Assembly (NCBI GenBank): GCA_002269645.1
Contig: NIVC01002489.1
Location: forward strand, 1 to 26,665
Length of the DNA stretch: 26,665 bases
Direction: 5' to 3'
Origin: Macrostomum lignano
Taxonomy: Eukaryota
In this document: positions 9,240 to 23,205 of the stretch, one piece after another
Position numbering within the stretch: position 1 is the stretch's first letter
How the letters are laid out: the number at the start of each line of letters is the position of its first letter
Position numbers and translations under genes: made by a program
The notes under the pieces: model-generated
Told to the model about the DNA's origin: nothing
What the model saw: only the letters and a program-made list of their open reading frames with translations
The model's database searches: none

Positions 9240-9308
9240 ACCCCTTCTTGGAAGGGGTTTCACAAATCAGGGAACACTCATTGAATGTTCCTCTCCACGG
9301 AAATCTTT
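9240..9308 (-). ncRNA. U5: U5 snRNA 3' half (host-type), displaced by the LINE insertions
   Basis: Minus strand AAAGATTTCCGTGGAGAGGAACATTCAATGAGT matches animal U5 after loop I (AAAGAUUUCCGUGGAGAGGAACA). Followed by Sm-like GATTTGTG and hairpin ACCCCTTC-CAA-GAAGGGGT. Confidence 0.88.
9293..9308. repeat. 16-bp direct repeat CTCCACGGAAATCTTT (TSD or element-borne U5 sequence); also at 15745..15760 and 23143..23158
   Basis: Exact 16-mer at all three element junctions; it is U5 sequence immediately 3' of loop I. Confidence 0.92.
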
Positions 9309-9865
9309 GTTGTTAAAACGAGGTGCCGTCGAAACCGGCGCGGGTCAGTTCCGAAGAACTCTGCTGCAGTTATATTTTGTATTTGATCGAAAGAATTAAA
9401 AATATTTACAAGATTTCGATTTGAATATTTATACGAATATTGAAATTAAAAATATACATATATAAAACTATTTTTCAATATTTTGCAGTATTTTGCACGC
9501 ATTTGGGGATAAAAAAGAGGGGAGGGAAATCCCGCACAAAGAAGGGATCTAATAAAAGCAGGACATCTAAAAAATACGTGCTTGATATTTGAAGGCCTAT
9601 TGAGAGTAAAAGCAAGACATTTAAGTAAAAAAATAGAGATTAAGAATGCAATAGCGCATATTTGAATTTAGTTGTAAAAATAGAATGAATATAGTAAAGG
9701 TGTAAAAAAGCAATTAGTGATATTTGTAGAGCAGTTGGGTAAAAAACACAGTTGGGAAAATTGTAAAAAGAAACGCGAGGAGACATAGAGATTACCTAAT
9801 CAGTCCTAATGACTGATCAACCGATCTCTGTCTCAGGCAGCAAGTTTAGTTTTATTAGTTGCGTT

Positions 9866-12684
9866 TCAGAGCGTGGTCACTTCCGGTTTGGGAGGCTGGT
9901 GCCCGGCCTTACCCTGGGGTGGGATTCCCCTGTTTCTTTCCCGACGCCTCATGGCATCCCAGAGGACATTGAGGACTGGGGTTCGGCCCGGAGCCCGAGG
10001 GGCTTCCGGCTCAATGTGGAAGCTGTGGAGCTTGGCTGCCCTCATCTTGAGCAGCCAAGCCACCCCCAGCTGCTTGACCCTGTCTGCGAGCATCGGCATA
10101 CCTGCCAGCTTGTGCAGGTATTCGATGCTGATGTAGGATGGCACACCATAGCAGATACGGAGAGCCAGGTTTTGGATTTTCTGCAATTTGATTTGGTTAG
10201 TCGCACAAATTTGGCTCAGGATTGGCGCTCCGTAGGTGAGAGCGCTTTCTCCGTATGCCCTGTACAGCATTCTGAGGGTGGTGCTACTCAGCTTAGTCAT
10301 TTTTGCAATTCTGCACAGTGACATTACAATGGCTCTGCTGGTATCTGCCATGTTGTCCACATGTTTGTTCAGGCAGAGGCTCTGGTCAAGGAGGACACCC
10401 AGGAATTTCACCTCCTGACAGTACGGAACCTCAGTGTCCCCCAGATACAGTTTGGGTCGCAAGTCCATGCGCCTAGTGGGTTTGTAGTTGAAAGCGATTG
10501 CTTTGCTTTTACCGGCATTCAGTCTAATGCCTTGTTTACCGCACCAGTCAAAGACTCGTCTGAGGTAGCTTTGAAGGGATGTTCGGAGCCCCGCAAAGGT
10601 GTCTGCTGAGGCCCAGACGGCCATGTCGTCTGCGAATTGACTGCGTTTGACGCTTGAGATGGTGGGAGTCGGCATTGAGCTGACGAAGAGGAGATACAGG
10701 AGAGGACTCAGAATGCCTCCCTGAGGGACGCCAGCCTGGATGGTGTGGGGATCGCTTAGGGCCCCCTCGATTCGAACCTGGATCTGTCTGTCTCGCAGGT
10801 AGTCAGACAGGATTCGCATGAGCATAGGTGGAAAACCATCGGTGAGCATGCTATGCCTGATCTTGTCGTGCCAGGTGGAGTCAAAAGCTGCCTCTGCATC
10901 CAGGAAGACTGCAGCGGACTTTTTAGCTTTGCACTTTGCTACCATGACATCTTGTGCCAGACGGCACAGGTTGTCATACGTGGAGTGAATTTTGCGGTAG
11001 GCGCATTGGTCATCTCCTAGGGTCTTATTATCCTCAAGGTGCTTGGTGAGTCTTTTTGCTATAAGCTTCTCAAACACTTTGCCCAGACATGAGGTCAGGC
11101 TGATTGGTCTGTAGGAGTTGGGGTGTTCGGGCGGTTTGTCCGGCTTGGGGATCATTGTCACCACAGCTTTCTTCCAGGCGCTGGGGAAAATCCCTCGACC
11201 GTAGCAGGCGTTGAAGAGGTTAGTGAGTCTCGTGATTGCCACCCCCTCTAAGCCCAGCTTGAGGACGCAGTTGGGAATCTTGTCCAGCCCGGGTGCTCCA
11301 TCAGGCCTGAGGTGCTCCAGTTCCCACACTGTGTCTGCCACAGAGAATGCAGCATCAAGTGGGTGGGTCTCAATGGGTTCGATTCCCTCAGGAACGGGGT
11401 AGAATGAGGTGAGCTGTGCCACATCGGCCACCTCACGTTTGAGCTGTTCGCATGTGGAAGGGACTGGGCGCATCTTTGAGTCCAGAGTCTCGGCTAGAAG
11501 GTTAGCCTTCTCCAGATCTGTGTGCGCAGTTGTTTGACCCAGGGTGAGGCTGGGGATCGAGGTTGGCTTAAATTTGCCCATCAGCTTTTTAGTGTCATGC
11601 CAGAAATTCTTCACTTTCTTGTTCTTGCTGTTTTCAACAATACTCTCACAGACTTTGGTGAGCTTTCCATTCTGGAAGGAGTTAATTTCTCTCTTTATGC
11701 GATTTGCGAGCTGGTTTGCTTGGGTTTTGAAATTTTGATCCCGTGTGCTGAAGAAGAGGCGTCTGAGTCGTCTGCGCTCTTTGATCAGGTCGAGGATGTA
11801 CTTGGGTAGGGCGTTTTTGGCACCACAGTCTGGTACTGTGGAGTCAATCACGGTGTGAATGGCCTTTGTGATGTGATCCACTTCGGCATTGATTTGGTCA
11901 GCATTTGATAATTTAATATTCTGATCTGAGCTCAAAGCTTCACTGATTTTGAGTCTGAACTCGTCCCAGTTTGTTTTTGAGAAGTTTTTGGGTCTGGGGG
12001 ACCAGCCCATTTCTTCGACTGAATATTGAGCGTGAGGATTATGGTAAGTGGTCACTGCCCAGGTCAGGACCCACCTCAAAGTCCTGCACAAATGGGAGAA
12101 AGTCCTCAGTGGCCAGGGCGAGGTCCAAGACATTCCTAGAAATCAGCCCGTTTTTGGTGGCCAGTCTGGTGAACTGACCGGCTTGATTGAGAATGGTGGC
12201 GAGGTGGGGCCCTCAGACAGCCAGTCGTGCAGCTGGTAGCCAGCCATGTTGTTGCTGCTGTCACCCCCGAGGAAGCGGTGTCTGGCATTGAGGTCACCCA
12301 TGAGCACACTGCGCCTACGGAGAGAAGATTTTTGAGTAGGTTCAGGTTCAGATGATACGGTGCTGGAGACCTGTACACCAGAGCAAGATTGAAGTCAGGA
12401 CCAGAGTTGTCAGACAAGCTCACGGTGCAAGAGATGGCTTCATGGTTGACATTGTCATACTGCAAGCGCACATTTGTGAGTTTGACGCGAGGAGAGTGGG
12501 CAAGGAGAAGCCCGCGTTTGACTTGCGGGGTATCATACCGAATGATGGAGTACCCGGGAATCTGGACAGTGTGACAACTTTTGAGAATGGTCTCAGAGAA
12601 GAGGGCAATGTCTAGCTCCTGACTGACGACCCACTGTGTCAGCTCTCTGATTTTCGGGTTGAATCCCCTGCAGTTTAAATGCAT
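9866..12684 (-). CDS. ORF2 of copy B: APE endonuclease + reverse transcriptase (~940 aa after correcting 4 single-base deletions)
   Basis: APE motifs HLNCRGF, DIALFSET, YRSP, MGDLNARH, LDLALA, SDHL. RT motifs YRPISLTSCLGKVFEK, AVFLDAEAAFDSTWH, GVPQGGILSPLLY, FADD, FLGVLLD. No RNase H or C-terminal CCHC recognised. Apparent frameshifts near 12320, 12200, 12045 and 12000. Confidence 0.95.
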
Positions 12685-12770
12685 AATCTTCAGGGCTGTG
12701 GTTTGATTGTTTGAGTCTACAGTTAACGCACTGAAGTTTCAATTCAAGTCTTGAGTTTAGCTGCCTGAGA

Positions 12771-22200: not shown

Positions 22201-22871
22201 TGTTAATGTGAACTGTAAATTATAGATAATTTTAACTTTTTTTCGTTTTCTACCACGAGACGAGACTGAGGGCCTTTTCATATTGCTTGCTCTGGTTCCA
22301 GAACAAGAACCAATTTGTGAAGTATAACTTTTTGTCTCCATAACTAGAGGGAGATACGTGCTATAAAGTTTTTATTATTGAATGACAGTCGCCAAGAAGA
22401 AAGTGAAAAATTGTGCTAAGTGAGGCTGTTAAGGCAGTCAAATATTAACAGAGTTTAATAGTTATACTGCTGTTTTTCTTGGAATTCCGAACCGATTCTG
22501 GTTCTGGAATTGGTAATATGAAAAGGCCCTGAGACTCTGAGAGTCGCGAGACCATGACTACTGCACGCGGCACGCCGCACAGTCCGTCTAGCAATTTAGG
22601 GATTCCAATCCCGGGATCCCGGGATCCCGGGATTGGGGCCAAAAATCCGGGATTTGAATCCCGGGATTTTTTTGGGAATCGAATCCCGGGATTTTTAATC
22701 CCGGGATTGCAAAAGCACCGGGATTCCGGGATTTTGAATCCCGGGATTTCAACAGCATCGGGATTTCGGGACTATTCAATCCCGGGATTGTAAAATGTCG
22801 GGATTTTGGAATCCCTACTCAAGAGAGGGCCGGCAGTCCATCTTTTTAGCGCTGGCGCGATTTGCAGCCAT
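19229..22871 (-). pseudogene. ORF1 of copy C (AlkB domain ~20845..21387), disrupted after about codon 17 by the MITE
   Basis: ATG at 22871 (MAANRASAKKMDCRPSL), MITE at 21879..22817, then a 596-aa open stretch 19984..21774 holding the intact AlkB domain and a 260-aa stretch 19229..20011 with three zinc knuckles. Confidence 0.92.
21879..22817. mobile_element. Non-autonomous hAT-type DNA transposon (MITE), 939 bp
   Basis: Terminal inverted repeats TAGGGATTCCAA / TTGGAATCCCTA; 8-bp TSD CTCAAGAG at 21871..21878 and 22818..22825. Copy B has a single CTCGAGAG at this site. Many subterminal ATCCCGGGAT palindromes. Confidence 0.9.
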
Positions 22872-23090
22872 ATGGCGTGATTATTTGGGTGCACTCACAC
22901 TAAACTAAACTAGACAACTACTAATGAGACAGGAGGCACACAAAGTGCGCTCGCTGAGAGGGGTGGGGCGACTGCAAGATAAGACTAGGGGTGGGGTAGA
23001 GATAAAAACAAATGTACAGTGGAATGGAAGGCTAACTAAAGTACTTTTAAGAGCTAAGCTAGGCTAGTCTAAACTATTCTATTTCTAATA

Positions 23091-23205
23091 AGCCTTTCTA
23101 GGAAAGGCCTGCAAAAACTAGAGAATTCTCCTAAGAGTATCCCTCCACGGAAATCTTTAGTAAAAGGCGAAAGATTTAATCGTGGAATGAAGAGAAACCA
23201 GAGCT
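23091..23205 (-). ncRNA. U5: Complete chimeric U5 snRNA gene (host 5' half 23159..23205 + element-borne 3' half 23091..23158), ~115 nt
   Basis: AGCTCTGGTTTCTCTTCA...AAATCTTTC-GCCTTTTAC-TAAAGATTTCCGTGGAG carries the invariant U5 loop I and stem Ic. Stem Ib TTTCTCTTCA/TGGAGGGATA, Sm-like AGTTTTTG, 3' hairpin GGCCTTTC-CTA-GAAAGGCT. Ends are approximate. Confidence 0.92.

What the first reader, a model, noticed from the sequence alone, without database searches (positions are those of the whole stretch)
9240..23205. A spliceosomal U5 snRNA gene split by 13.85 kb of site-specific LINE insertions
Seen: joining 23205..23159 to 9308..9240 gives a 116-nt canonical U5 (stem Ib TTTCTCTTCA pairs fully with TGGAGAGGAA; GCTC pairs with GAGT). 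Both elements end at exactly the same nucleotide, ACT^AAAGATTTCC, right after invariant loop I. Established: sequence-specific non-LTR elements target multicopy RNA genes (R1/R2 in 28S rDNA; Keno and Utopia in U2 snRNA). Inference: this is a U5-specific family that targets the most conserved part of an essential gene. Novelty needs a literature and Repbase check; I have an unverified recollection of a U5-targeting L1-type element in Lepidoptera.
Basis: partly seen in the sequence, partly recalled or inferred. Interest (0 to 1): 0.9.

Follow-up and report, generated by a model that had tools for sequence, protein, structure and literature searches.

The report
U5-targeting LINE that rebuilds its target
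A jumping gene of the flatworm Macrostomum lignano inserts at one exact nucleotide of the spliceosomal U5 RNA gene, but every full-length copy is flanked by a 95-base duplicate of the gene's back half, so an intact U5 gene is left at the front of a growing tandem array.

Summary
The sequence features are real, but "a U5 gene split by 13.85 kb" is the wrong picture. Rfam finds a complete U5 at 23206..23091 (minus strand, 83 bits). It is followed head-to-tail by two 99.4%-identical units. Each unit is a 95-nt segment (68-nt U5 3' half plus 27 nt of U5 3' flank) followed by a ~6.36-kb APE/RT LINE. After them come a divergent (C-type) U5 3' half and an older decayed remnant.

The window is from Macrostomum lignano. 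Three other contigs of that genome carry the same arrangement behind U5 genes whose upstream flanks are 92% identical or unalignable, while the elements are >99% identical. All nine distinct 3' junctions fall at ACT^AAAG, with four junction variants. One 5'-truncated copy has a ~14-bp target duplication. U5-specific retrotransposition is therefore well supported.

I think the 95-nt repeat is most likely a long target-site duplication (bottom nick after loop I, top nick 27 bp past the gene) that regenerates the gene. An RNA-borne head is the main rival. New insertions then hit the rebuilt head gene, giving arrays that are young at the head and old at the tail.

A Tx1-clade family labelled as U5-targeting is already on record. 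This element appears to belong to a different clade, and its ORF1 has an ALKBH3-like demethylase domain. I rate it a new variant of a known kind.

The parts
23231..23284 (-). Putative U5 promoter: a PSE-like block TGCTTTACGAAAACGAAGGTTTCATTCAGG (23284..23255, -78..-49) and a TATA-like TCTATATAAT (23240..23231, -34..-25)
   Evidence: These are the only blocks conserved between two otherwise unalignable U5 locus types (window/M2892 against L006/L007) in alignment A2. Promoter function is inferred.
23091..23206 (-). Complete U5 snRNA gene at the head of the array: resident 5' part 23206..23159 plus A-type 3' half 23158..23091
   Evidence: Rfam RF00020, 83.2 bits, model positions 1-117 of 117, E = 3.7e-13. 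It is the only U5 5' half in the window.
23064..23158 (-). 95-nt target repeat, copy 1: 68-nt U5 3' half (A-type) plus 27 nt of U5 3' flank. It forms the 3' part of the head gene.
   Evidence: Identical (0 differences in 95) to copy 2. The same 95 nt end the array on contig NIVC01002892.1, where unrelated flank follows.
15761..23063 (-). LINE unit 1 (element proper): 5'UTR, ORF1 (start ATG 22871; ALKBH3-like domain plus CCHC), ORF2 (APE plus RT; stop about 16318), 3'UTR ending TTTTAACAAC. ORF1 is interrupted by a MITE. ORF2 has two private frame breaks (about 18476/18443 and about 18006).
   Evidence: Self-BLAST 99.4% to unit 2; Pfam; tblastn frames; difference list.
21879..22817 (.). 939-bp hAT-like non-autonomous DNA transposon inserted in unit 1 just after the ORF1 start. 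It has 12-bp TIRs (TAGGGATTCCAA) and an 8-bp TSD (CTCAAGAG on the + strand). It is not part of the LINE.
   Evidence: Absent from unit 2 and from all units at the other loci. TIR plus TSD found as inverted repeat I17.
15666..15760 (-). 95-nt target repeat, copy 2 (A-type U5 3' half plus 27-nt flank), between the 3' end of unit 1 and unit 2
9309..15665 (-). LINE unit 2 (element proper): ORF1 from ATG 15473 to about 12754 (broken at 14746 and 13404), ORF2 about 12736..9866 (private 1-nt indels at 12386, 12268 and 12200), 3'UTR 9865..9309. The last ~1.4 kb carries a cluster of about 10 private substitutions, so the unit is a mosaic.
9240..9308 (-). C-type U5 3' half, 70% identical to A-type, with a better Sm-site match (GAUUUGUGA). 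It is the promoter-less downstream remnant of the gene that unit 2 entered.
   Evidence: The identical arrangement is present in L006.
9128..9213 (-). Older decayed remnant: the last ~30 nt of an element 3'UTR (9213..9184, with an internal deletion) followed by a degenerate C-type U5 3' half 'D' (9183..9128)
   Evidence: Local alignment score 53 against a shuffle mean of 20.3, sd 3.5, maximum 34.
1..2005 (-). Third element copy, cut by the window edge. Its 5' end lies about 20 nt inside the element proper, so it has no U5 head. It has an internal deletion joining the 5'UTR to ORF1 and is embedded in a 100-bp satellite.
   Evidence: 98.4% identical to units over 1..1925, but only 75% over the 5'UTR stretch. 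The upstream satellite is not detectably U5-derived.

Best explanation
This is a family of APE-type non-LTR retrotransposons of Macrostomum lignano, about 6.36 kb long. ORF1 is about 906 aa with an ALKBH3-like dioxygenase domain and a CCHC knuckle. ORF2 is 944 aa with APE and RT domains. The family integrates by target-primed reverse transcription at one nucleotide of U5 snRNA genes.

Shown:
- The first (bottom-strand) nick falls between U5 nt 48 and 49 (ACT^AAAG), at the 3' edge of invariant loop I, and the element's 3' end (...AACAAC) is joined there.
- Every full-length copy is flanked by direct repeats of a 95-nt target segment: the whole 68-nt U5 3' half plus 27 nt of 3' flank.
- The copy of this segment on the upstream side rejoins the resident promoter and 5' half into a complete U5 gene. 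The downstream copy is a promoter-less fragment.

Inferred, favoured at about 0.5:
- The 95-nt repeat is a long target-site duplication. It is made because the second (top-strand) cut lies about 95 bp downstream of the first, 27 bp past the end of the gene, so the regenerated gene keeps its own 3' flank, where a 3'-end processing signal would be expected.
- The rebuilt head gene is again a perfect target, so later insertions enter at the head and build tandem arrays (2 units here, 4 on another contig) that are youngest at the head and oldest at the tail.
- Recombination between arrays shuffles units afterwards.
For: Intact head gene:
- Rfam full-length U5 in the window and in L004/L005 and L006 (83.2-83.8 bits).
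- There is only one U5 5' half per locus.

Target specificity:
- Nine distinct 3' junctions at four loci are all at ^AAAGATTTCCGTGG, joined to both A-type and C-type halves.
- There are four junction variants: CAAC|, CAAC+AAA|, CAAC+AAC|, TTTTTAAC|.
- U5 upstream flanks are 92% identical (window against M2892) or unalignable (against L006/L007), while units are >99% identical.
- The 5'-truncated L007 copy has AAAGATTTCCGTGG on both sides.

Activity and element type:
- ORF2 is open over 944 aa in unit M_1, and ORF1 is open over 731-744 aa in M_3 and L6_2.
- ORF2 frame breaks in the window's units are private to each unit.
- APE plus RT domains are present.

95-nt repeat as target duplication:
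- The array on NIVC01002892.1 ends with the same 95 nt and then unrelated DNA.
- Flanking copies differ by 0-1 substitutions for WIN_1 and M_1 to M_4.
- The head variant follows the locus (AAGTTG in all 4 units and the natural flank of M2892; AAATAG in the window). The nearby 5'UTR variant does not, and all four combinations occur.
- The third copy starts about 20 nt inside the element proper, without a head.
- No ribozyme that could release a co-transcript was found.

Age gradient:
- The most distal unit, M_4, has at least 34 private substitutions against 0-10 in the other units.
- In the window, decayed remnants lie at the distal end.
Against: - Unit 2 of the window has an A-type head but a C-type half downstream (26 substitutions in 95). 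A pure TSD model needs later recombination to explain this. The clustered private SNPs in the unit's last 1.4 kb make recombination plausible but do not prove it.
- The heads flanking L6_1 and L7_2 differ by 4 and 2 substitutions.
- The truncated L007 copy shows a ~14-bp duplication, not 95 bp, with 6-8 nt of filler.
- The head|element boundary is identical in 10 of 10 units while the 3' junction varies. That fits an inherited head, or DNA-level duplication of units, better than ten de novo 5' junctions.
- All loci were found through the element, so U5 genes without insertions, and element copies elsewhere, could not be counted.
- The third copy lies in a satellite, not in U5.
- The assembly is an error-prone PacBio draft with many chimeric scaffolds.
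- The closest relatives from other samples show no U5 sequence on their contigs.
Confidence: 0.6

Rival explanations
1. The 95-nt head is part of the mobile RNA. Transcription starts at the U5 promoter (co-transcription or 5' transduction), so the RNA is U5 plus flank plus LINE. After reverse transcription the U5-complementary end of the cDNA anneals to the target's own U5, giving a seamless junction. The real top-strand nick lies only about 14 bp downstream.
For: - It explains the A-type head next to a C-type downstream half without extra events.
- It fits the ~14-bp duplication of the truncated L007 copy.
- It fits the invariant head|element boundary in 10 of 10 units.
- Head variants 77g/79t are linked with body variant 3406c, including in L6_1, which sits beside an AAATAG-type unit.
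- R2 is co-transcribed with its target (PMC12203849).
Against: - Head type follows the locus, including the natural terminal flank of M2892, and is unlinked to the 5'UTR type about 150 nt away.
- The third copy begins about 20 nt inside the element proper, with no head.
- No self-cleaving ribozyme was detected.
- From general knowledge: snRNA-type promoters couple to 3'-box processing, which should stop a 6.4-kb read-through, and the head includes the 27-nt flank where such a signal would lie.
- L006 may be a chimeric scaffold.
Confidence: 0.22
2. There is one (or very few) old insertion event, and everything else happened at the DNA level: unequal crossing-over between the 95-nt repeats, segmental or whole-genome duplication of the locus, and gene conversion between paralogous arrays. 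On this reading there is no ongoing U5-specific retrotransposition.
For: - M. lignano is a neopolyploid with a highly redundant assembly.
- SNP patterns within arrays are mosaics.
- The head|element boundaries are invariant.
- The upstream flanks of the window and M2892 are paralogous.
Against: - There are four different 3'-junction variants, and junctions to two different U5 variants at the same nucleotide.
- A 5'-truncated copy has its own target duplication at the head of an array.
- Arrays sit behind U5 genes with unalignable flanks.
- Units are >99% identical while flanks are at most 92% identical.
- ORF2 is open in M_1, and the frame breaks are private to each unit.
- Two 5'UTR lineages occur within one array.
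Confidence: 0.07
3. At each integration the reverse transcriptase, on reaching the 5' end of the LINE RNA, switches template onto a 3'-extended pre-U5 snRNA (as in L1/U6 chimeras). The U5-complementary cDNA end then pairs with the target.
For: - The head ends a short distance past the mature U5 3' end: 27 nt in new units and about 3 nt in the old C/D unit.
- The filler at the L007 truncated junction repeats a U5 segment.
- L1 chimeras with snRNAs are well documented (PMC4476161, listed).
Against: - The head variant matches the local gene's flank rather than a common expressed pool.
- The boundary is invariant in 10 of 10 units.
- A 27-nt extension would probably lie beyond the normal pre-snRNA cleavage site (general knowledge, not tested).
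Confidence: 0.04
4. U5 genes were originally in tandem arrays. Each insertion deleted the 5' half and promoter of the gene it entered, leaving the previous intact gene upstream. This is the explanation considered for Utopia in Phytophthora U2 arrays.
For: The same visible pattern (intact snRNA gene upstream, 3' fragment downstream) was reported for Utopia, where the authors left deletion against duplication unresolved (PMC4640811).
Against: - No uninterrupted U5-spacer-U5 arrangement, and no second 5' half, is seen in about 100 kb of four loci.
- It would need an identical deletion of 150 bp or more (the conserved promoter reaches -78) at every insertion.
- The truncated copy shows a duplication, not a deletion.
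- The third copy shows that the sequence from about 20 nt after the 95-nt segment belongs to the element.
Confidence: 0.03
5. One reading: a single U5 gene (23205..23159 plus 9308..9240) was split and inactivated by two successive insertions.
For: The 5' half pairs 15/15 with the 9308 copy, and the 9308 copy is the outermost intact 3' half.
Against: The 5' half is contiguous with a complete A-type 3' half, and the gene scores as full-length U5. The same holds at two other loci. Natural A-type genes exist, as shown by the M2892 terminal copy.
Confidence: 0.02

Closest known systems
Tx1-clade LINE family listed with target 'U5 snRNA' (Kojima 2015, Genome Biol Evol, Fig. 3 legend; PMC4494074)
   Same: An APE-type non-LTR retrotransposon recorded as inserting in U5 snRNA genes.
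   Different: - Neither the family name, the host nor the insertion site could be read, because the figure and supplements are not held.
- The present element has a 944-aa ORF2 that matches Pfam PF14529 (Exo_endo_phos_2).
- Its named relatives, at 30-36% identity, are labelled jockey or X-element. This points away from the L1/Tx1 group, but no phylogeny was made.
- Nothing about target regeneration or an AlkB-type ORF1 is reported for the Tx1 family.
Utopia (RLE-type) and Keno (APE-type, Tx1 clade) U2 snRNA-specific LINEs (PMC4640811)
   Same: - Precise 3' junction inside a spliceosomal snRNA gene.
- Low-copy target and tandem insertions.
- Truncated snRNA genes that outnumber intact ones.
- In Phytophthora, an intact U2 gene lies upstream and a U2 3' fragment downstream of the element.
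   Different: - The target is U2, not U5.
- Utopia has a restriction-like endonuclease.
- For Utopia the authors could not decide between target deletion and duplication. Here the terminal copy on M2892 defines a 95-nt duplication.
[quoted passage not shown]
   Same: A site-specific LINE whose copies are flanked by an unusually long duplication of the target. It is the precedent for widely staggered nicks.
   Different: - R9 belongs to the R2/RLE group and targets 28S rDNA.
- Its duplication (126 bp from my memory; the paper could not be read) does not restore an interrupted rRNA gene.
- Here the duplication spans the rest of a 116-nt gene plus its flank, so a whole gene is rebuilt.
R1 (28S rDNA, APE-type, 14-bp TSD) and the other R1-clade site-specific LINEs
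   Same: APE plus RT ORF2, no poly(A) tail at the junction, an exact 3' junction, and a ~14-bp duplication in the one truncated copy. R1's 14-bp TSD is from general knowledge.
   Different: - Different target.
- Full-length copies have 95-nt repeats.
- ORF1 carries an ALKBH3-like domain.
- Clade membership was not tested. Sequence comparison with the TRAS1 EN structure is insignificant (E = 1.7).
Integrative elements that carry a replacement for the gene segment they displace (for example phages and genomic islands in tRNA genes)
   Same: The outcome is the same: integration inside a small RNA gene leaves an intact gene on one side and a fragment on the other (general knowledge).
   Different: A completely different mechanism (site-specific recombinase with attP homology) in a different domain of life. 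This is an analogy only.

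Membership tests
U5 spliceosomal snRNA (Rfam RF00020), for the head gene 23206..23091 | Covariance-model score above the gathering threshold over the full model | tested here: met
   83.2 bits against 40, model positions 1-117 of 117. Homologous head genes score 83.5-83.8 bits.
U5 spliceosomal snRNA (Rfam RF00020), for the head gene 23206..23091 | Invariant loop I sequence CGCCUUUUACU closed by stem Ic | tested here: met
   Exact match to the consensus in the alignment.
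U5 spliceosomal snRNA (Rfam RF00020), for the head gene 23206..23091 | Canonical Sm site (RAUnGR) and evidence that the RNA is made | tested here: inconclusive
   A-type has AGUUUUUGC, which deviates at two positions. C-type has GAUUUGUGA. Expression is not testable with these tools. Promoter-like blocks are conserved upstream.
Sequence-specific non-LTR retrotransposon | ORF2 with endonuclease and reverse transcriptase domains | tested here: met
   PF03372/PF14529 at aa 19-235 and PF00078 at aa 531-783 of the open 944-aa ORF2 of unit M_1.
Sequence-specific non-LTR retrotransposon | Independent copies share the same 3' junction nucleotide in the target | tested here: met
   Nine distinct junctions at four loci, with four junction variants and two U5 variants as partner. 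Flanks are 92% identical or unalignable.
Sequence-specific non-LTR retrotransposon | Most or all genomic copies lie in the target (genome-wide census) | not testable with these tools
   No tool scans this eukaryotic genome. Loci were reached only through annotated ORF1 proteins. One copy in the window (1..2005) has a non-U5 5' flank, and its 3' junction is outside the window (one search failed).
Tx1 clade (home of the recorded U5-targeting family) | RT phylogeny within Tx1/L1 and an L1-like ORF2 architecture | tested here: inconclusive
   No reference sequences were available. The 944-aa ORF2, the PF14529 match and the jockey/X-element names of relatives argue against membership. The only APE-LINE RT in the PDB is L1, which matches at 3.5e-21.
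R9-like long-TSD elements | Full-length copies flanked by a long direct duplication of target sequence | tested here: met
   95-nt repeats flank WIN_1 and M_1 to M_4 with 0-1 substitutions. The terminal copy is followed by unrelated DNA. Exceptions are WIN_2 and L6_2 (A against C).
R9-like long-TSD elements | Restriction-like endonuclease, R2 lineage | tested here: not met
   The endonuclease is APE-type. The element may work like R9 but is not a member of its lineage.
AlkB / ALKBH 2OG-Fe(II) dioxygenases (ORF1 domain) | HxD...H iron ligands and RxxxxxR 2-oxoglutarate motif in a PF13532 domain | tested here: met
   PF13532 E = 4e-22. The alignment to human ALKBH3 (2iuw, E = 4.9e-23) conserves WHSDDE, QHxVP and RxxLTFR. 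Enzymatic activity was not tested.

The most novel reading that the evidence does not exclude
The element has evolved a non-destructive way to live in an essential low-copy gene. A ruler-like pair of nicks 95 bp apart, one in loop I and one just past the gene's 3' flank, duplicates the whole distal half of U5 at every full-length insertion. The host therefore always keeps a working, promoter-linked U5 gene, and the element always recreates its own landing site, which builds head-growing arrays. In addition, this would be the first non-LTR retrotransposon lineage whose ORF1 carries an active ALKBH3-type RNA/ssDNA demethylase, presumably to strip methyl marks or damage from its RNA or cDNA.
Probability: 0.35. 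Interest if true: 0.8.

Novelty: new variant of a known kind. Interest (0 to 1): 0.62.

Why it matters
Site-specific LINEs are models for how mobile DNA avoids harming its host, and they are being developed as tools for targeted gene insertion. [quoted passage not shown]

This locus suggests an answer: the insertion rebuilds the gene it enters. The same mechanism may explain the unresolved 'intact U2 upstream, fragment downstream' pattern of Utopia.

The system is testable. M. lignano has transgenesis, the relevant junctions are defined to the nucleotide, and an open ORF2 exists. An endonuclease that nicks a defined conserved 116-nt gene and leaves it intact would be a candidate 'safe-harbour' integrase.

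The ALKBH3-like ORF1 domain adds an independent question: do retrotransposons need to erase RNA methylation? So far that has been raised only for plant viruses and one orchid Ty3/Gypsy lineage (PMC9289625).

Tried and rejected
- Relatives of ORF2 from other samples (60%, 56% and 47% identical; L001-L003), and a complete distant relative with the same ORF1/ORF2 architecture (L009-L011), were searched for U5 with Rfam, fuzzy motifs and BLAST. None was found. U5 association could not be extended beyond M. lignano.
- Folding energy as a test of which 3' half 'belongs' to the 5' half: no difference.
- Shared ORF-breaking mutations as a test for DNA-level duplication: ORF2 breaks are private. An apparent shared ORF1 frame change disappeared once other units were seen with that stretch open. 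Many breaks are 1-nt indels that may be PacBio errors.
- The idea that the 100-bp satellite upstream of the third copy derives from the U5 head: not significant (568 of 1000 shuffles score as well).
- Extending the window leftwards to see the third copy's 3' junction: the ORF is not on record.
- The L007 array runs into an assembly gap.
- Clade assignment through solved EN structures: uninformative.
- 3'UTR secondary structure: not better than shuffles (z = -0.32).
- The R9 paper itself and the Kojima 2015 supplements are not held.
- The weak Rfam hits in the window (MIR8562, Termite-leu, anti-hemB and others) fall in a satellite and in the CCCGGGAT repeats of the MITE, far below gathering scores. 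I dismissed them.

Full report
**1. What is in the window**

All features are on the minus strand. Rfam finds one complete U5 snRNA at 23206..23091 (83.2 bits, model positions 1-117, E = 3.7e-13). The motif AAAGATTTCCGTGGAG, which starts the 3' strand of stem Ic, occurs three times, at 23158, 15760 and 9308, against 0.36 expected by chance. The loop I/5' half occurs only once.

Self-comparison shows that 9289..15431 equals 15742..21883 at 99.4% over 6.15 kb, and that 15420..15760 equals 22818..23158. Read 5' to 3' on the minus strand, the region is:
- the U5 promoter region and 5' half;
- a 95-nt segment followed by LINE unit 1 (7,398 bp together, including a 939-bp foreign insertion);
- the same 95-nt segment followed by LINE unit 2 (6,452 bp together);
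- a different U5 3' half at 9308..9240;
- a decayed element tail plus U5 3' half at 9213..9128 (alignment score 53 against 20.3 ± 3.5 for shuffles);
- about 7 kb of satellites;
- a third, partial element copy at 2005..1.

However, the 5' half is not orphaned. It continues directly into a full 3' half, so the gene at the head is intact.

In the Rfam structure the resident 5' half forms 15/15 pairs with the 9308 ('C-type') half and 13/15 with the adjacent 'A-type' half. Stem I energies are equal.

**2. The element**

The units encode the following proteins:
- ORF1, from the ATG at unit position 288 to about 3007. It carries a 2OG-Fe(II) oxygenase domain and a CCHC knuckle.
- ORF2 with APE-type endonuclease and reverse transcriptase domains.

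The 3' end is ...GTTTTAACAAC, without a poly(A) tail.

The two window units differ at 36 columns, 13 of which are 1-nt indels. ORF2 frame breaks are private to each unit.

The extra length of unit 1 is a 939-bp hAT-like MITE with 12-bp TIRs and an 8-bp TSD.

**3. Organism and other loci**

An ORF1 search hit proteins annotated in Macrostomum lignano at 100% and 96% identity. Their cluster members led to three contigs of assembly GCA_002269645.1:
- NIVC01002892.1 (L004, L005 and L008 merged, called 'M2892'). One U5 5' half is followed by four tandem units. The array ends with the same A-type 3' half plus 27 nt of flank (95 nt), and then unrelated sequence follows.
- NIVC01003829.1 (L006). A head U5 is followed by an internally deleted unit and then by a unit, the C-type half and downstream DNA. 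The part from the 3' region of the first unit onwards is 99.74% identical to the window, but the upstream flank is unrelated.
- NIVC01002030.1 (L007). The U5 5' half is followed by AAAGATTTCCGTGG, 6-8 nt of filler, a 5'-truncated copy (last ~577 nt), the 3' junction with three extra A, then a full unit and the start of another unit that runs into an assembly gap.

Rfam calls full-length U5 at the head of M2892 and L006 (83.8 and 83.5 bits). In L007, where the head insertion is truncated, it calls only a partial U5.

The U5 upstream flanks fall into two types. The window and M2892 are 92% identical over 1.37 kb. L006 and L007 are 97.6% identical over 245 bp. The two types cannot be aligned with each other, except for a PSE-like block at -78..-49 and a TATA-like box at -34..-25. 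So these are genuine, separately evolving U5 genes.

The units are >99% identical across all loci and are therefore much younger than the loci.

**4. Target specificity**

Nine distinct 3' junctions are all at ACT^AAAG. The partners are either A-type or C-type halves. There are four junction variants: CAAC|, CAAC+AAA|, CAAC+AAC| and TTTTTAAC|. Such slippage on the terminal AAC repeat is what independent TPRT starts would produce.

Together with the truncated copy and its own target duplication, this supports a U5-specific retrotransposon. ORF2 is open (944 aa) in unit M_1, and ORF1 is open over 731-744 aa in two other units, so the family was recently active or still is.

A genome-wide census could not be run. 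The loci were found through the element, and one copy in the window has a non-U5 5' flank.

**5. Why is an intact U5 left behind?**

Every full-length unit is preceded by the 95-nt segment that also follows it. I considered four mechanisms.

*(a) A 95-bp target-site duplication from widely staggered nicks.*

Evidence for:
- The natural end of the M2892 array defines exactly this 95-nt segment.
- Flanking copies are identical or differ by one substitution for five units.
- The variant just past the U5 end (AAGTTG or AAATAG) follows the locus. The 5'UTR variant about 150 nt further on does not, and all four combinations occur.
- The third copy starts about 20 nt inside the element proper, without any head.
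- No ribozyme is detectable.
- R9 is a precedent for an exceptionally long TSD.

Evidence against:
- Unit 2 has an A-type head and a C-type half downstream.
- The L6_1 and L7_2 heads differ from their downstream copies by 4 and 2 substitutions.
- The truncated copy has a ~14-bp duplication.
- The head|element boundary is invariant in 10 of 10 units.

The first objection is softened by the finding that unit 2, and its L006 counterpart, carries about 10 private substitutions clustered in its last 1.4 kb and almost none elsewhere. It is a recombinant between two lineages. L006 itself is either a recombinant or a chimeric scaffold; 36% of this assembly's length lies in chimeric scaffolds (PMC10733133).

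*(b) An RNA-borne head, through co-transcription from the U5 promoter.* This explains those exceptions directly. It does not explain the link between head type and locus, or the headless third copy. It would also require an snRNA-type promoter to produce a translated 6.4-kb RNA.

*(c) Template switching onto pre-U5 RNA.* The locus-specific heads argue against it.

*(d) Tandem U5 genes with 5' deletions.* The absence of any second 5' half argues against it.

I favour (a) at about 0.5 and (b) at about 0.2.

**6. Array growth**

Under either (a) or (b) the rebuilt head gene is the only complete target, so arrays should grow at the head. Three observations are consistent with this:
- The most distal M2892 unit has at least 34 private substitutions and a 140-bp deletion, against 0-10 substitutions for the others.
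- In the window, the distal end holds the decayed remnants.
- In L007, the newest event, the truncated copy, sits at the head.

The C-type half is well preserved while remnant D, also of C-type, is badly decayed. This fits C having served for a time as part of a selected head gene. That point is inference only.

**7. Comparison with what is known**

Kojima & Jurka 2015 list only Keno and Utopia (U2), Dada-U1 and Dada-U6 as snRNA-gene-specific transposons. Kojima 2015 shows a Tx1-clade family with target 'U5 snRNA' in a figure legend. No other paper in the library links U5 genes and LINE insertions.

The present family has a 944-aa ORF2 with PF14529. Its closest named relatives, at 30-36% identity, are labelled jockey or X-element. 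This suggests a different clade, but no phylogeny was possible.

The visible pattern 'intact snRNA gene upstream, 3' fragment downstream' was described for Utopia in Phytophthora and left unresolved between deletion and duplication. Here the duplication can be delimited.

I therefore rate the finding as a new variant of a known kind. The host phylum and probably the clade are new, and so is the 95-nt gene-regenerating duplication (or head).

**8. Side finding: the ORF1 domain**

The ORF1 domain aligns to human ALKBH3 (E = 4.9e-23) with the iron and 2-oxoglutarate motifs intact. An exhaustive search of 1.84 billion representatives finds only nine proteins at E ≤ 1e-30. A few of these are long ORF1-like proteins, and one sits in a complete AlkB-ORF1/APE-RT element in another sample. 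In the held literature AlkB domains in retroelements are reported only for an orchid Ty3/Gypsy lineage.

**9. Caveats**

- The assembly is a Canu/PacBio draft polished with Pilon, from a neopolyploid genome with known redundancy and chimerism.
- Unit counts, 1-nt indels and the L006 arrangement need raw-read confirmation.
- All mechanistic statements about nick positions, transcription starts and U5 function are inferences from sequence.

Noticed in passing
window 13534-15473 and 19984-21774 (minus strand); L005:16252-18444: ORF1 of the LINE contains an ALKBH3-like 2OG-Fe(II) dioxygenase domain with intact HxD...H and RxxxxxR motifs, plus a CCHC knuckle. The architecture is very rare (9 representatives at E<=1e-30 out of 1.84 billion). 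It recurs in a complete relative from another sample (L009). I found no report of an AlkB domain in a non-LTR element.
   Followed up: partly
window 21879-22817: A 939-bp non-autonomous DNA transposon with 12-bp TIRs (TAGGGATTCCAA), an 8-bp TSD and dense CCCGGGAT subterminal repeats, so hAT-like. It is inserted just after the ORF1 start of unit 1. It causes several spurious weak Rfam hits (Termite-leu, anti-hemB, MIR1846).
   Followed up: partly
window 1-2005: The third element copy is a mosaic. Its ORF1 part is 98.4% identical to the units, but its 5'UTR is only 75% identical. It has an internal deletion of about 620 bp, no U5 head, and lies in a satellite. Its 3' junction is outside the window.
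   Followed up: partly
window 9309-10706 (last 1.4 kb of unit 2); L006 counterpart: About 10 substitutions private to this unit cluster in its 3' 1.4 kb, with almost none in the first 5 kb. This indicates recombination or gene conversion between two element lineages.
   Followed up: yes
window 23231-23284; L004, L006, L007 equivalents: Two short blocks are conserved upstream of U5 genes whose flanks are otherwise unalignable: TGCTTTAYGAAAACGAAKGTTT at -78..-49 and TCTAnATAA at -34..-25. They are candidate flatworm snRNA promoter elements (PSE plus TATA-like).
   Followed up: partly
window 9240-9308 against 23091-23158: M. lignano has two U5 3'-half variants that are only 70% identical (A-type and C-type) and share the same 5' half. 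C-type has the better Sm-site match. Which one is expressed is unknown.
   Followed up: no
window 23825-24573, 25187-26272, 3423-3962, 2022-2383 and 7975-8900: The U5 locus is embedded in satellites: a 16-bp unit x47, a 19-bp unit x44, a 30-bp unit x13, and 100/163-bp units. The Rfam MIR8562 hit at 23688-23912 (52.6 bits against a gathering score of 211) is an artefact of the 16-bp satellite. Several long 'ORFs' at 25199-26441 are repeat translations.
   Followed up: partly
L006 (NIVC01003829.1) against the window: L006 is 99.74% identical to the window from inside unit 1 to 9 kb downstream, but its U5 upstream flank is of the other locus type. This is either ectopic recombination between arrays or a chimeric scaffold.
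   Followed up: partly
units 1 and 2 (window 9309-23063): Thirteen of the 36 differences between the two units are single-base indels, about half of them in short homopolymers. These may be uncorrected PacBio errors rather than true frameshifts.
   Followed up: partly
L007 9106-9130: The 5' junction of the truncated copy is complex: U5 +1..+14, then T, then a second GATTTCC(G), then the element from about position 5877. This suggests microhomology-mediated joining or a short template switch.
   Followed up: partly
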